Shown here: one piece after another, positions 13,582 through 52,800 of the stretch | Position numbering within the stretch: the stretch's first letter is position 1 | How the letters are laid out: every line of letters begins with the position of its first letter | Assembly: GCF_011386835.1 (NCBI RefSeq) | Contig: NC_088808.1 | Location: 16,926,001 to 16,990,000, forward strand | Origin: Chrysemys picta bellii | Taxonomy: Eukaryota | Direction of reading: 5' to 3' | Length of the DNA: 64,000 nucleotides | The notes under the pieces: generated by a model | What the model was told of the DNA's origin: nothing | What the model saw: only the letters and a program-made list of their open reading frames with translations | The model's database searches: none | Program-made: the position numbers and the translations under genes

Positions 13582-13670
13582 GGTTGTCAGTATCAGAGGG
13601 GTAGCCGTGTTAGTCTGGATCTGTAAAAAGCAAAGAGTCCTGTGGCACCTTATAGACTAAGGTTGTCAGT
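13582..13670. mobile_element. Truncated Penelope-like terminus
   Basis: GTAGCCGTGTTAGTCTGGATCTGTAAAAAG...GTGGCACCTTATAGACTAA; TSD GGTTGTCAGT at 13582-13591 and 13661-13670. Confidence 0.7.
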
Positions 13671-25127: not shown

Positions 25128-32369
<7,242 letters not shown>

Positions 32370-32527
32370 GAGCACACCCCCAGCTCTGTCCTGGAGCCCC
32401 CACTCCCAGCCACATGGAATCCCACCAGTATTCTGGCCTCGTTTCTCCCTCTGCTTGGCTTGGGGCACCCACTTTGTTAAATGCTTATCTCTGCCCGGAT
32501 TCCCTGTGGGACTGGCACAGCAACGTC

Positions 32528-32674
32528 ATCTTCCCTGCATCCGACGAAGTGGGCATTCACCCACGAAAGCTTATGCTCCAATACATCTGTTAGTCTTAAA
32601 GGTGCCACAGGACTCTCTCTTGCTTTTTACAGATCCAGACTAACACGGCTATCCCTCTGATACTATCTTCCCTG
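32528..32674 (+). mobile_element. Penelope-like terminus in the predicted GFI1B 3'UTR
   Basis: TSD ATCTTCCCTG at 32528-37 and 32665-74; same family as 13592 and 47035. Confidence 0.8.
32537..32576 (+). ncRNA. Minimal type I hammerhead ribozyme fold (Penelope type, variant core)
   Basis: GCAU-CCGACGA-A-GUGGG-CAUUCA-CCCAC-GAAA-GC-UU-AUGC; stems I and II fully paired, palindromic AGCU stem III; U4 is C. Confidence 0.65.
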
Positions 32675-33334
32675 GTGTTACCCCACATCCCCCTGTGCGT
32701 GACCAAGAATGGCACTGCCGGGATCACTCACTGTCTGGTTTTATCACAGGCATTGGGCCAGGCTCTGATCTCAGTTACTCCAGTGTAAATCCCCTGGAGT
32801 TGTCATTACTCTGGATTTACAATGAGTGCAGGATCGGGCTAATCTCATCCCCTGGCGACACAGAGGGACTCCTGGGTTGATGACACCAACTGACTAGCGA
32901 TCTGTGCCAGGCTCCCTAATCACGCTCTACTTCGATGGTTAGGAAGATAAGGCCTGGGCATGCAAATAATTTGCATTCAATGAGCTCCGCTCAGCTAAGA
33001 CAGGGTTCCCATAGAGGGCATAAATTTGGGGCACATACACCTAGACTCACATTCTTTCAACAGGAGTCTTTTTGTTATCAGGTGAAAAATATGTAGCACT
33101 GCACGTTTATCTTACAATAGAGTTGGAGGGCAGGGCAGTAAAAAATCAGACCCTACATGCCCATATTAGTACCACCTGGCTACCTACGTGGACTTCTGAG
33201 CTACGTGGTATTCAGGACCACGGGGAATTTTGTTTCCCTGTCACTCTTATAAAAGAAGAAGCTGATCTATCCATCTTGCACCCATCACATTAGTATGTGA
33301 GTACCCTACAAGTATTAGCAAGGCAAAGTAGCAA

Positions 33335-33526
33335 TACACCTCTACTCCGATATAACGTGACCTGATATAACATGAATTCGGATAGAACGCGGTAAAGCAG
33401 TGCTCCGGGGGGGCGGGGCTGCACACTCCGGCGGATCAAAGCAAGTTCGATATAACGCGGTTTCACCTATAACACAGTAAGATTTTTTGGCTCCCGAGGA
33501 CAGCATTATATCGGGGTAGAGGTGTA
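33335..33526. mobile_element. Tc1/mariner (Tigger-like) MITE
   Basis: TIR CACCTCTACTCCGATATAA / TTATATCGGGGTAGAGGTG flanked by TA. Confidence 0.85.
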
Positions 33527-34223
33527 TTTCCTTCTCTCTCTGGTCAAGCGGTTAAAGCACAGGGCTGAGAACAAGAGCCATGGGTTCTCTCCTTGGTGCT
33601 GCTACATCCTGACTATGTGACCTTAGGCAGGGCACTTCCCCTCCCTCTGACTCAGTTTCCCCATCTGTAAAATGGAGATGATACTTCACCTCACTGGGGT
33701 GTCATAAAGATTAATGTACCAGGTTTGTCAAGTGCTTCGAGATCCTCAGCTGGAAGACACTAGAGAAGGGCAAAGTGCTATGTTAGGGAGAGAAGTGCCT
33801 TTAAATGAGAGGGGCAATGAAGCCCCAACCAAGTCAGCCTCGGACACTGTGTCCAACAGTGACATCACTGTGTTTAGCCTGTCGCTGGGATGCAGCATCG
33901 GTTCCTTTGTCCCTCTCTTTACCCCAGCACTGATGAATGAAACAAAAGCCCTGCAGTGACTCTCCTACAGATAGGAAAGACATGATGCAAGTGGAGAATT
34001 CATTTACTGCCAGGAGGAAAAGGGCCAAATCCTGCTCTCAGTTACCCCAGTGTAAATCCAAATGGCTCTGGCCCAGGATGTGAAGCATAAATGCCTCCGT
34101 GTTTGTGCTGGCTCTAGGCTACTTTCCACTAACATGCAATCTAGTGACTCAAAACACTCTCCCCTCCTTTGCGTGTACATTTACATATGTATTTATACTT
34201 ATTGTAATGTATATTTTTACTGT

Positions 34224-34229
34224 AATAAA
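34224..34229 (+). terminator. GFI1B: Probable GFI1B poly(A) signal
   Basis: First AATAAA I found after the stop codon, preceded by a UA-rich tract. Confidence 0.5.
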
Positions 34230-34463
34230 CCAGACTGTAACAACCTGTACAGGCCTGTTAGATTTCCCAGATAAACGCTATGTTTCTTCTCAGGTAGAGG
34301 TAGACTATCACAACGCTCTGTGAACTAAAGACACCCATTTCAAGAAAGGTTTGGCCATGCCCAGCTCTGGATTTGCAATAGCCTGTCTGATTTACTAGTC
34401 TCTCTCTTAAATATCACAGGGGCCTAGTCCACACCATGGACTGAAGTGTCACTTAGGGGGGAA

Positions 34464-47023: not shown

Positions 47024-47164
47024 TTGGTATTCTTAGAGGGTCCTGTGGCACCTATGAGACTAACAGACTTTCTGTTAGTCTCAAAGGTGCCACAGGACCC
47101 TCTGTTGCTTTTTACAGATTCAGACTAACACGGCTACCCCTCTGATACTTGGTATTCTTAGAGG
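47024..47164. mobile_element. Penelope-like terminus, hairpin copy
   Basis: 33-bp inverted arms around CTT; direct repeat TTGGTATTCTTAGAGG at 47024-39 and 47149-64. Confidence 0.75.
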
Positions 47165-49830: not shown

Positions 49831-52800
49831 GCTTCCTGGGTAAAAGATGCCTGTGGGGAGGGGGCTTTCCTAGCGGGTTGCAGGCGGGTTTCCTCGGTGA
49901 GGGGTTCCCTGGGTACGGGTCATCTGGGGTAAAGTGGGGATGGATCTAAGGGCTTCCCGGGGGAGGGATTGTCCCAGTAAATCCCAGGGAGGGGGTTGGG
50001 GTGGGCAGGGGAGCGGGGTGTTCTTGGTAAGAGTTATCTGGGTTACAGTGAGAAGCGCCTAGGATTTCTTAGAAGGTGGGAGGTGTCCTGGTTAAAGGGA
50101 CCTCAAGGGGAAGGAGGCTGGGGGCTATCCAAGGGATGCTCTAATAAATTTGTTAGTCTCTAAGGTGCCACAAGTACTCCTGTTCTTTTTTAGAGGGATA
50201 GAGGGAGATGTTGGAGATGTTAACTTCGGGGCGGGGGGGCTGAAGGTGTCTGTCGTGGATAAAGGGAGCCCTGAGAAGAGGGTCTAGAGTTCTGAGTAAG
50301 GGTGGATGATCCAGTTCAGCGAGCTCTCTTGCTGTGGGTGATCCCATAAGGTGTGTGTTGGGATTAGAGTGAGGCGCAGCTAGGGGGTACTTAGATAGAC
50401 TGTAATTGGAGGGAAATGCCCTAAATAAGAGGGTGAGAATCTATGGTTCTCTGGGGTAAAGAGACTTGCTCTGGGCTGGTGCCCCATGAAAAGGAGGTGA
50501 TGGTCACTAAGGGATAGCATTTTGGTTTGGAGGTGGATGGGGAGGGCATGATGCAGAGGAAAATTCAGTTGGTTTTTTTGGAGGGACAAATTTGATGTTG
50601 AAAAGTGCTTATGCTCTTCGTAATGTAGATATATGCTGACCCTGGAAAAAGGCTCGAGTTGTACTTCCGCCCCAAGGATCCCTACTGCCATCCTGTGTGT
50701 GCCAACCGCTTCCCTACCTCTTCCATGCTGTTCAAGGTAAAGAGGAAGATTAGGAGGAAGCAGCTGGAAGCTGAAGGAGAAACCCAACAGGAAGTCAAGT
50801 TTGAAATGGAAGTTCTTGGGGTTGTCTCCACTGTTTACAAATTTCAAGGTAGTAATTTGATCTGCCTATGTGTGTGGAGTAGTGACTAGCAGTTCTGGTG
50901 GGAAAAGGGCAGTGCTCCCTCTTGCTTGAGTCCAACAAACTGTGTGTTCAGAAAACCGTGCATGTCAACCGTACAACATTGGTATCTAGGGAACTCAATG
51001 TGTGACCTGGATTTGATACCATCCCGCTTCTGTATTGTGACTTAATAACACATTGTCCTCTCTGGTGTTGTATTAGATTATACTATAATCCAACATGTTT
51101 TATAATGGATGCACCTATGCAGGATAAAGGGGAAAAGTTGTATTTTCATGGACAGTAATGTATTATTGTTTTTAACCTTTAGTTAACTGCTTGGCAGGTG
51201 TTTAAGATAGGGAAATATAAAGTATTATGCTTGAAAAATGAAAGTAGGACAAGGTTTCCAGAGTGCTTTTATGAATGCACTATCACCAGGGTGCAGCTTC
51301 CCGAATGTGAATTAATACCTGGCCGAGGAATCAGCAACCTTTGGCACGCAGCCCATCAGGGAAATCCGCTGGTGGGCCGGGACAGTTTGTTTACCTGCAG
51401 CGTACGTAGGTTCGTCTGATTGCAGCTCCCACTGTTCATGGTTTGCCGTTCCAGGCCAATGGGGGCTGCGGGAAGCGGCGCAGGCCGAGGGATGTGCTGG
51501 CCACCGCTTCCCGCAGCCCCCATTGGCCTGGAACAGCAAACCGCGGCCAGTGGGAGCTGCAATTGGCTAAACCTGCAGACGCTGCAGATAAACAAATCGT
51601 CCCAGCCTGCCAGCGGATTTCCCTGACGAGCCGTGTGCCAAAGGTTGCTGATTCCTGACCTAGCCCATTTAACTCAGTGCAGGAAACAGCATCTTCCCAG
51701 AGGTGTCTGAGGAAAGGAGAACTGGGTATTGTGCAGCATATTATTGTCTCTGATACACACCTTTTTATCTTGACTTTTCCCTCCTCATAGGAATGTCTGA
51801 TTTCCAGTACCTGGCAATGCATTCTGGACCTGAAAGCAAACAGATCTCTATGTATGACAAGATCTTGATGCTCAAACCAGAAAAGGAGGAATTCTTCAAT
51901 AGGGAATTACCCCTCTACATCCCCCCACCTATTTTTTCACGTCTGGATACCCCTATAGACTATTTCTATCGGCCAGATGTACAACACCGGTCAGTGCCTT
52001 TTCTTGTGATGTAGTAAATAGTTACATTGTCTCTTGAATGAATAGATAATAGAAACCTTTTACTGGGCCAGCATATCACTTATAAAATCTGAATTTTCAA
52101 GTTCACTGGGAGGATATCCCTGCTTCATTACCTGAAGAAACCTCTTGTAGTATAACAGACATGGTTTGGTAGTAAAGGATCTTTCAAAATGGCGTATAAG
52201 AAAAATTGAAGGGGTTAGATGATCTTGGGGGGTCATGTTGTTTGTATCAGGCAGTGATCATGACCAAAGCATAGGATGCTTTTGTTTTGTTTCTTTGTCC
52301 AGAGTCTATCTGTGTAATTGAAATGAGAAAAAAATAGATTTAAAATAACCAATATCCCACTGAGCGAATGTTTTTTTAATGTGGAATCTGTGCTCTTTCA
52401 GAACAGCATTTTAAAATATTTCAGTCATATGCCTCATCAGGGCAAACTGCTATAACCGATACATGCCTTTGTTATCTCTCTTTCCATGTTAGCTTTGTTT
52501 ATTTCAATACAATCTGGACAAAAATACTTGGAAGGTAGCATGGGCTAAATGGAGCTCTGCAAGTCAAGAGCTCTTCCACTAGCAAGCTTGTGGTCTTGGG
52601 CAAGTCACTTCTTTCTGTTTCCTTATTTTTGTTCTGAAATAACTGAGATGATAATTATAGTCACCTGCACAAAATAGGTCTTACCAGAGTGGAGATAAGG
52701 GGTTGCTTAGTTGGGGCTTGTGGCCTATTAAGTTGTTTCTGGTTTGAGTTTCGTGGACTTCCTTTGAATTCGGAAAAAAAATGCCATTGTCACAGAGATT

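What the first reader, a model, noticed from the sequence alone, without database searches (positions are those of the whole stretch)
32537..32576. Penelope hammerhead ribozyme fold in sense orientation in the GFI1B 3'UTR
Seen: a complete minimal type I fold 168 nt after the stop and before the first AATAAA (34224): stem I GCAU/AUGC, core CCGACGA plus an extra A, 5-bp stem II, GAAA, palindromic AGCU, predicted cut after U32572; the insertion has a 10-bp TSD. Established: Penelope-like elements carry minimal hammerheads whose palindromic stem III requires dimerisation. Inference: if active, cleavage needs two RNA copies and would remove the poly(A) tail, giving concentration-dependent self-limiting of a dosage-sensitive repressor. 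Caveats: U4 is C, the CUU site is a weak triplet, and the UTR extent is unproven.
Basis: partly seen in the sequence, partly recalled or inferred. Interest (0 to 1): 0.75.

Follow-up and report, generated by a model that had tools for sequence, protein, structure and literature searches.

The report
Retrotransposon hammerhead relic after GFI1B
The 40-base hammerhead-shaped motif is real, but it is the inherited motif of a short, dead fragment of a common Penelope-like retrotransposon that landed just after the GFI1B stop codon, and nothing indicates that it cuts the GFI1B mRNA.

Summary
Observation confirmed. Window 32537-32576 reads GCAU|CCGACGA|A|GUGGG-CAUUCA-CCCAC|GAAA|GCU-U^AUGC. It starts 168 nt after the TGA of a GFI1-family last exon. 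It heads a 127-128-bp insert that is flanked by the direct repeat ATCTTCCCTG.

The insert belongs to a repeat family with at least five other copies in the window. These have 8-15-bp duplications, a shared 3' tail and fold-back 5' ends, as in Penelope-like elements. The motif has every hallmark of the published Penelope minimal hammerhead. The "extra A" is a family feature, not a defect.

The C at core position 4 is probably not a private mutation. The only other complete motif in the window, from a subfamily about 19% diverged, has it too.

The proposed self-limiting switch is not supported:
- There is one copy only, so helix III cannot form in cis.
- The calculated affinity for pairing in trans is negligible at mRNA concentrations.
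- The core is non-canonical.
- Published Penelope hammerheads cleave poorly even as dimers.
- A competing pairing with host UTR sequence is predicted.
- Rfam finds no hammerhead.

Inclusion in the mRNA is likely, because no poly(A) signal precedes the motif.

The scan has noted this motif family 183 times in this genome. Verdict: ordinary.

The parts
32191..32369 (+). Last coding exon of the GFI1-family (GFI1B-like) gene: two C2H2 fingers and stop TGA at 32367-32369
   Evidence: The SNAG start MPRSFLVK is at 25128.
32528..32537 (.). Left copy of the target-site duplication ATCTTCCCTG; its last G overlaps the first base of helix I
32537..32664 (+). 5'-truncated terminal fragment of a Penelope-like element, 127-128 bp, ending in the family tail ...CAGACTAACACGGCTATCCCTCTGATACT
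   Evidence: Blastn against the window found 92-94% identical copies at 47071-47149 and 13589-13660(-), and about 81% identical copies at 7055-7157 and 8953-9042(-). Tail matches.
32537..32576 (+). Minimal type I hammerhead-shaped motif. Helix I 32537-40/32573-76; core CCGACGA 32541-47 (C at position 4); unpaired A 32548; helix II 32549-53/32560-64; GAAA 32565-68; palindrome AGCU 32568-71; H17 U32572.
32588..32645 (+). Predicted tail hairpin of the element (UGUUAGUCU 32588-96 pairing with AGACUAACA 32637-45)
   Evidence: prediction only
32665..32674 (.). Right copy of the target-site duplication ATCTTCCCTG
32467..32477 (+). Host UTR stretch CCCACUUUGUU, predicted to pair with 32543-32553 (core plus the 5' strand of helix II) and compete with the hammerhead fold
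   Evidence: Forcing the hammerhead fold costs 4.6-5.6 kcal/mol with flanks of 80-150 nt.
34224..34229 (+). First canonical AATAAA after the stop; likely poly(A) signal of a UTR of about 1.9 kb
   Evidence: No PAS-like hexamer lies in 32370-32536.

Best explanation
A short, 5'-truncated terminal fragment of a Penelope-like retrotransposon was inserted by target-primed reverse transcription. It created a 9-10-bp duplication in what is now most probably the 3'UTR of the turtle GFI1B-like gene.

The fragment carries the element's own minimal hammerhead motif. That motif belongs to the retrotransposon's life cycle, where tandem copies and the element's protein are available. In the GFI1B mRNA it is a lone passenger copy with no partner for helix III, a C at core position 4 and a competing local fold. 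It most likely does not cleave and has no designed regulatory role.

Shown here: the motif, the insertion, family membership and the absence of an earlier poly(A) signal. Inferred: transcription through the element and catalytic silence.
For: - The sequence and fold are as described.
- The flanking repeat is exact.
- At least five other family copies lie in the window, with 8-15-bp duplications, a common tail and fold-back arms.
[quoted passage not shown] That paper reports such motifs in turtle (PMC4209133).
- The window holds only two complete motifs, and the other is on the opposite strand at 9005-9044, upstream of the coding start at 25128. No second sense copy is therefore seen in the pre-mRNA.
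- The double-hammerhead homodimer is +2.7 kcal/mol relative to two folded monomers. Kd for any dimer is about 0.08 M in the nearest-neighbour model.
- The UTR context disfavours the fold by about 5 kcal/mol.
- The literature reports a single motif as inactive and dimers as weakly active (PMC4209133).
- The Anolis element's hammerhead needs its protein, and no RNA-seq ends were seen at its site (PMC11167929).
- U4C 'considerably decreases activity in vitro' (PMC3088659).
- Rfam gives no hammerhead hit.
Against:
- C4 appears to be conserved in two diverged subfamilies with structure-compatible substitutions.
- One fold-back copy has an arm that starts exactly at the predicted cleavage site. The C4 motif may therefore be cleavage-competent in the element's own setting.
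- A U4C viroid hammerhead still works in vivo (PMC3088659).
- Other Penelope transcripts could in principle act as partners in trans.
- The nearest-neighbour model ignores tertiary contacts and Mg2+.
Confidence: 0.85

Rival explanations
1. Two GFI1B mRNAs pair through the palindromic AGCU and helix I, form a double hammerhead, cut after U32572 and lose their poly(A) tails. This would give dosage-dependent self-limitation.
For: The motif geometry allows a nested double-hammerhead pairing. Penelope hammerheads are thought to act as dimers (PMC4209133). The motif is in the sense orientation and probably within the UTR.
Against: - The calculated dimer fraction is below 1e-6 even at 10 nM. A transcription-factor mRNA at 10-100 copies per picolitre is only about 17-170 pM (my arithmetic).
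- The core has C4.
- Published dimers cleave weakly and mostly at non-physiological Mg2+ (PMC4209133).
- A competing UTR fold is predicted.
Confidence: 0.01
2. Cleavage in trans. Abundant transcripts of other Penelope copies, possibly with the element's protein as a chaperone, pair with the GFI1B copy and cut it at a low rate. This would tie GFI1B mRNA stability to retrotransposon expression.
For: - In a double hammerhead the cut strand and the catalytic strand come from different molecules (geometry worked out from the motif).
- Helix I and the AGCU palindrome are identical in both subfamilies.
- The Anolis hammerhead is protein-assisted (PMC11167929).
- A fold-back arm starts at the predicted cleavage site, which suggests the lineage's motif cleaves in vivo.
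Against: - There is no evidence of active elements or of their expression in GFI1B-expressing cells.
- The intermolecular arms are only 4 bp each.
- No RNA-seq ends were found at the site even for the active Anolis element (PMC11167929).
- The breakpoint evidence rests on one copy.
Confidence: 0.03
3. The insert matters to the mRNA for reasons other than catalysis. For example, its stable hairpins or sequence could serve as binding sites for proteins or microRNAs.
For: Helix II and the tail hairpin are stable predicted structures. Retrozyme-like sequences that overlap exons in Xenopus tend to sit in 3'UTRs (preprint 10.64898/2026.07.22.740005).
Against: - No conservation data could be obtained.
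- The whole 128-nt element folds no better than shuffles (z -0.39).
- The copy is 6-8% diverged from its closest relatives, as expected for neutral decay.
Confidence: 0.06
4. The element is not in the mature mRNA, because the transcript ends before 32537.
For: No reads could be laid. No sequencing run is on record as RNA.
Against: - None of 22 poly(A)-signal hexamers occurs in 32370-32536, and there is no A-run there.
- The first canonical signal is at 34224.
- Fourteen small, transcriptome-sized contig sets hold 70-88% of the sampled words of 32370-34400. Their labelling as RNA is only the tool's guess.
Confidence: 0.05

Closest known systems
Minimal hammerhead motifs of Penelope-like elements (Cervera & De la Pena 2014, PMC4209133; Lunse, Weinberg & Breaker 2017, cited from reference lists, text not held)
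   Same: - Type I topology.
- 4-bp helix I and 5-bp helix II with G10.1-C11.1.
- An unpaired nucleotide between A9 and G10.1.
- No helix III, only a palindromic AGCU.
- Carried in the terminal part of a truncated element with a target-site duplication.
- Dispersed mostly as single dead copies; already reported in turtles.
   Different: Core position 4 is C rather than the invariant U. The same is true of the only other complete copy in the window. The published descriptor required canonical catalytic boxes, so such a lineage would have been missed. No reverse-transcriptase ORF lies in this window to tie the family to a Penelope clade directly.
Hammerhead of the Anolis Poseidon element PAc (Frangieh et al. 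2024, PMC11167929)
   Same: A reptile Penelope-like element with a hammerhead a short distance upstream of the internal 'tail' site where reverse transcription starts. Here the insert likewise ends in a fixed tail about 90 nt after the motif.
   Different: PAc has a canonical C3/G8 core and was shown to cleave, though only with its protein present. Nothing has been tested for the turtle copy.
Discontinuous hammerhead in mammalian Clec2 3'UTRs (Martick et al. 2008, cited in PMC4209133; details from my own knowledge)
   Same: A hammerhead embedded in the sense orientation in a 3'UTR, where cleavage would separate the coding part from the poly(A) tail.
   Different: The Clec2 ribozyme has a canonical core, three stable helices and tertiary contacts. 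It cleaves efficiently as one molecule and is conserved among species. The turtle motif lacks helix III and U4, has no partner and is a recent repeat copy.
Natural U4C hammerhead variant of a viroid (Ambros & Flores 1998, as summarised in PMC3088659)
   Same: The same core substitution. It shows that C4 is not absolutely lethal in vivo.
   Different: That ribozyme is a full hammerhead with a helix III and loop-loop contacts, in a replicating RNA present at high copy number.

Membership tests
Hammerhead ribozyme (catalytic consensus) | Core box C3-U4-G5-A6-N7-G8-A9 | tested here: not met
   The box reads CCGACGA, with C at position 4. The other six positions fit.
Hammerhead ribozyme (catalytic consensus) | G12-A13-A14, an A15.1-U16.1 pair, and H17 not G | tested here: met
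   GAAA is at 32565-68, U16.1 at 32571 and H17 is U32572. The A15.1-U16.1 pair can form only between two molecules.
Hammerhead ribozyme (catalytic consensus) | Three helices around the core | tested here: not met
   Helices I and II form. Helix III is absent in a monomer, where there is only the 4-nt palindrome.
Hammerhead ribozyme (catalytic consensus) | Match to an Rfam hammerhead covariance model | tested here: not met
   There is no hit at gathering score on the window and no hammerhead hit at E<=10 on 32400-32750.
Hammerhead ribozyme (catalytic consensus) | Site-specific self-cleavage | not testable with these tools
   This needs an in vitro assay or RNA-end mapping.
Penelope-like element minimal hammerhead | Unpaired nucleotide between 9 and 10.1; G10.1-C11.1; long helix II; short helix I; palindromic 15.2-16.2 | tested here: met
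   A32548; G32549-C32564; 5-bp helix II; 4-bp helix I; AGCU. Criteria are from PMC4209133.
Penelope-like element minimal hammerhead | Lies in the terminal repeat of a Penelope-like element or a truncated copy of one | tested here: inconclusive
   It is a repeat family with variable duplications, a fixed 3' tail and fold-back 5' arms, as described for these elements. No RT/GIY-YIG ORF of the family lies in this window, so the link rests on architecture.
Penelope-like element minimal hammerhead | Family-level conservation with structure-compatible variation | tested here: met
   Two copies from subfamilies about 19% apart differ at 7 of 40 positions. Five are at N7 or in loop 2, and two preserve pairing as wobbles (hypergeometric P=0.0015). 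The sample is only two copies.
Regulatory 3'UTR hammerhead (Clec2 type) | Located within the mature 3'UTR | tested here: inconclusive
   No poly(A) signal precedes it and the first AATAAA is at 34224. No reads could be laid.
Regulatory 3'UTR hammerhead (Clec2 type) | Able to fold into an active form within one mRNA | tested here: not met
   There is no helix III and no second sense copy in the window. The context fold competes. Dimer affinity is negligible.
Regulatory 3'UTR hammerhead (Clec2 type) | Conserved at the orthologous site across species | not tested
   Runs from three organism labels hold most words of the 2-kb stretch. Presence of the insert itself could not be resolved.

The most novel reading that the evidence does not exclude
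The C4 minimal hammerhead of this turtle Penelope lineage is cleavage-competent in vivo. This is hinted at by its structure-compatible conservation in two subfamilies and by a fold-back arm that starts exactly at the predicted cut. On this reading, the sense copy in the GFI1B 3'UTR is cut at a low rate when it pairs in trans with other Penelope RNAs, perhaps helped by the element's protein. Retrotransposon activity would then be coupled to the level of a haematopoietic repressor.
Probability: 0.03. Interest if true: 0.6.

Novelty: new member of a known kind. Interest (0 to 1): 0.12.

Why it matters
It matters little as it stands. It is one of very many dead Penelope fragments in this genome, and the kind was described in 2014, turtles included.

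Two small points are worth keeping:
- The lineage seems to carry C at the normally invariant core position 4 while keeping the rest of the fold. Searches that require canonical catalytic boxes would miss such a lineage.
- Breakpoints of fold-back copies at the predicted cleavage site offer a cheap genomic read-out of whether such motifs cleave in vivo.

A self-cleaving switch in the mRNA of a dosage-sensitive blood-cell regulator would be interesting, but the evidence speaks against it.

Tried and rejected
- **Rfam.** A scan at gathering score and a permissive scan of 351 nt found no hammerhead. The only hits were two chance lncRNA matches at E>1.
- **RNA evidence.** The look-up of sequencing runs returned 20 holders, none on record as RNA. 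No coverage, ends or presence/absence across species could therefore be read.
- **More copies of the family, to settle C4 versus U4.** Exact-pattern scans of metagenome contigs and prokaryotic genome contigs found nothing. This is unsurprising for reptile DNA.
- **Papers.** The supplement of PMC4209133 that shows the turtle motifs is not held. The Lunse et al. paper is not held.
- **A register giving a canonical CUGANGA box.** None exists in the sequence.
- **A chance origin of the motif.** Rejected by the shuffles and by repeat-family membership.
- **GFI1B versus GFI1.** This was not separately tested. The call rests on the SNAG start, the finger exons and the TSC1 exon noted on the same window (s1-320868). 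TSC1 and GFI1B are neighbours in human, from my own knowledge.

Full report
**1. The observation**

The sequence at 32537-32576 is GCAUCCGACGAAGUGGGCAUUCACCCACGAAAGCUUAUGC. It can be drawn as a type I hammerhead without helix III:
- helix I, GCAU/AUGC (32537-40 with 32573-76)
- core box CCGACGA (32541-47)
- one unpaired A (32548)
- helix II, GUGGG/CCCAC (32549-53 with 32560-64) closing a 6-nt loop
- GAAA (32565-68)
- the palindrome AGCU (32568-71)
- U32572 as H17

Alone, the 40-mer folds into helices I and II, with pair probabilities of 0.91 or more.

The stop codon TGA is at 32367-69, and the motif starts 168 nt after it. The first AATAAA is at 34224.

One correction is needed. The left copy of the repeat ATCTTCCCTG is 32528-32537, and the right copy is 32665-32674. 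G32537 is therefore shared between the duplication and helix I. The duplication is 9-10 bp and the insert 127-128 bp.

A structural descriptor allowed C or U at position 4. It required G10.1-C11.1, GAAA, a palindrome, a non-G H17 and a helix I of at least 4 bp. It found two motifs in the 64 kb and none in 100 shuffles. Rfam finds no hammerhead at gathering score, nor at E<=10 on the local 351 nt.

**2. What it is**

The 128 bp belong to a dispersed repeat:
- Copies at 47071-47149 and 13589-13660(-) are 92-94% identical.
- Copies of a sister subfamily at 7055-7157 and 8953-9042(-) are about 81% identical.
- A fragment lies at 50136-50195.

All end in the same tail (...CAGACTAACACGGCT...CTCTGA...). 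They have duplications of 8-15 bp, and several have an inverted 5' arm. This is the architecture described for truncated Penelope-like elements.

The motif meets each hallmark that Cervera and De la Pena list for Penelope minimal hammerheads (PMC4209133):
- G10.1-C11.1
- a long helix II and a short helix I
- a palindromic 15.2-16.2

That paper also reports such motifs in turtle.

The scan's notebook holds 183 notes on this motif family in this genome. Follow-ups there called the copies ordinary dead fragments. I treated those notes as leads only.

**3. The C at position 4**

The only other complete motif in the window is at 9005-9044 on the minus strand, in the sister subfamily. It also reads CCGANGA.

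The two motifs differ at 7 of 40 positions. Five differences are at N7 or in loop 2, and the other two turn a G-C pair into a G-U pair. None touches a conserved core position (hypergeometric P=0.0015).

C4-G5 is a CpG, which decays towards TG. Two independent T-to-C changes are therefore unlikely. C4 is most simply the state of the lineage's source elements, in agreement with note s1-318384. This rests on two copies. Attempts to fetch more from public collections found nothing.

The literature says that most core mutations cause drastic loss of activity. It also says that a natural U4C viroid hammerhead 'considerably decreases activity in vitro' yet suffices in vivo (PMC3088659).

**4. A hint that the lineage's motif does cleave in its own setting**

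In the fold-back copy at 6996-7156, the inverted arm 6996-7044 is the reverse complement of 7068-7116, with one mismatch. It starts exactly at the A that follows the predicted cut, GAAAGCUU^AUGC. An arm of that kind is expected if reverse transcriptase jumped onto a run-off cDNA of an RNA whose 5' end was the cleavage product. That mechanism is my inference.

Taking the unit as about 128 nt, the chance of hitting that one position is about 1 in 100. This is one case, and note s1-329924 reports a similar one elsewhere.

By contrast, two other ends fall at the 5' edge of helix I, not at the cut. These are the 5' end of the GFI1B copy and the inner end of the arm of the 9-kb copy (compare s1-322506).

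**5. Is it in the mRNA?**

The gene has a SNAG start (MPRSFLVK) at 25128 and C2H2 finger exons at about 30190, 31226-31372 and 32191-32369. That fits a GFI1-family repressor. A TSC1 exon noted on the same window (s1-320868) fits GFI1B by synteny, which I know from human and did not test.

None of 22 poly(A)-signal hexamers and no A-run lies between the stop and the element. Any usable signal is downstream.

Fourteen small contig sets (37-226 million letters) hold 70-88% of the sampled words of 32370-34400. Genome-sized sets of about 2000 million letters hold 91-94%. This is what transcriptomes expressing a long UTR would give, but the tool marks their RNA nature as a guess.

Inclusion is therefore probable, about 0.9 in my estimate, but not shown. 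I worked beside those places afterwards.

**6. Would it cut the mRNA?**

Several independent points say no.

(a) A monomer cannot form helix III. Single Penelope motifs showed no detectable cleavage, and dimers or trimers showed only low activity, mostly at non-physiological Mg2+ (PMC4209133).

(b) No second sense copy lies in the window. Pairing would therefore have to be between separate mRNAs. In a double hammerhead, helix I and helix III are both intermolecular and 4 bp each.
- The nearest-neighbour energy of that structure is -19.9 kcal/mol, against -22.6 kcal/mol for two folded monomers.
- The Kd for any dimer is about 0.08 M.
- The dimer fraction is below 1e-6 at 10 nM.

The model ignores tertiary contacts. 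The gap to picomolar mRNA levels is nonetheless many orders of magnitude.

(c) The core has C4.

(d) With 80-150 nt of flanks, the minimum-energy fold pairs host 32467-32477 with 32543-32553. Forcing the hammerhead shape costs 4.6-5.6 kcal/mol.

(e) The one reptile Penelope hammerhead tested needed the element's protein, and no RNA-seq ends were seen at its site (PMC11167929).

**7. Comparison and verdict**

The motif works like, and by architecture belongs with, the Penelope minimal hammerheads. It fails the strict hammerhead consensus at U4 and at helix III.

It resembles the Clec2 3'UTR hammerhead only in location.

Retrozyme-like sequences that overlap exons in Xenopus also tend to sit in 3'UTRs (preprint 10.64898/2026.07.22.740005). 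The location is therefore not unusual for tolerated insertions.

The best reading is a neutral passenger insertion. The residual novel reading, trans-assisted cleavage of the GFI1B mRNA, gets about 3%.

Noticed in passing
window 6996-7156: This is a fold-back copy of the sister subfamily, flanked by a 12-bp duplication CTTTCACAAAAG. Its inverted arm 6996-7044 is the reverse complement of 7068-7116 and starts exactly at the nucleotide after the predicted hammerhead cut. That suggests a template RNA whose 5' end was the cleavage product.
   Followed up: partly
window 8964-9070: This fold-back copy carries a complete C4 motif on the minus strand (9005-9044). The inner end of its inverted arm falls at the 5' edge of helix I, the same point as the 5' end of the GFI1B insert. 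C9044 is shared with the tail as 1-nt microhomology. The recurrent end hints at a discrete RNA 5' end, or the start of a unit, at that position.
   Followed up: partly
window 47035-47149 and 13589-13660(-): Two younger-looking copies of the same subfamily as the GFI1B insert, 92-94% identical to it. Both are truncated downstream of the hammerhead. The first has a short hairpin arm and a 15-bp duplication TGGTATTCTTAGAGG; the second has an 8-10-bp duplication.
   Followed up: partly
window 32467-32477 with 32543-32553: Host UTR sequence upstream of the insert is complementary over 10-11 nt to the hammerhead core plus the 5' strand of helix II. It dominates the predicted fold once flanks of 80 nt or more are included.
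   Followed up: partly
window 25128-32369: The coding part of the GFI1-family gene runs from the SNAG start at 25128 through finger exons near 30190, 31226-31372 and 32191-32369. The exon model was not completed, and the GFI1B versus GFI1 call rests on synteny with TSC1.
   Followed up: partly
It lies inside the presumed 3'UTR and blocked the only reads call.
   Followed up: no
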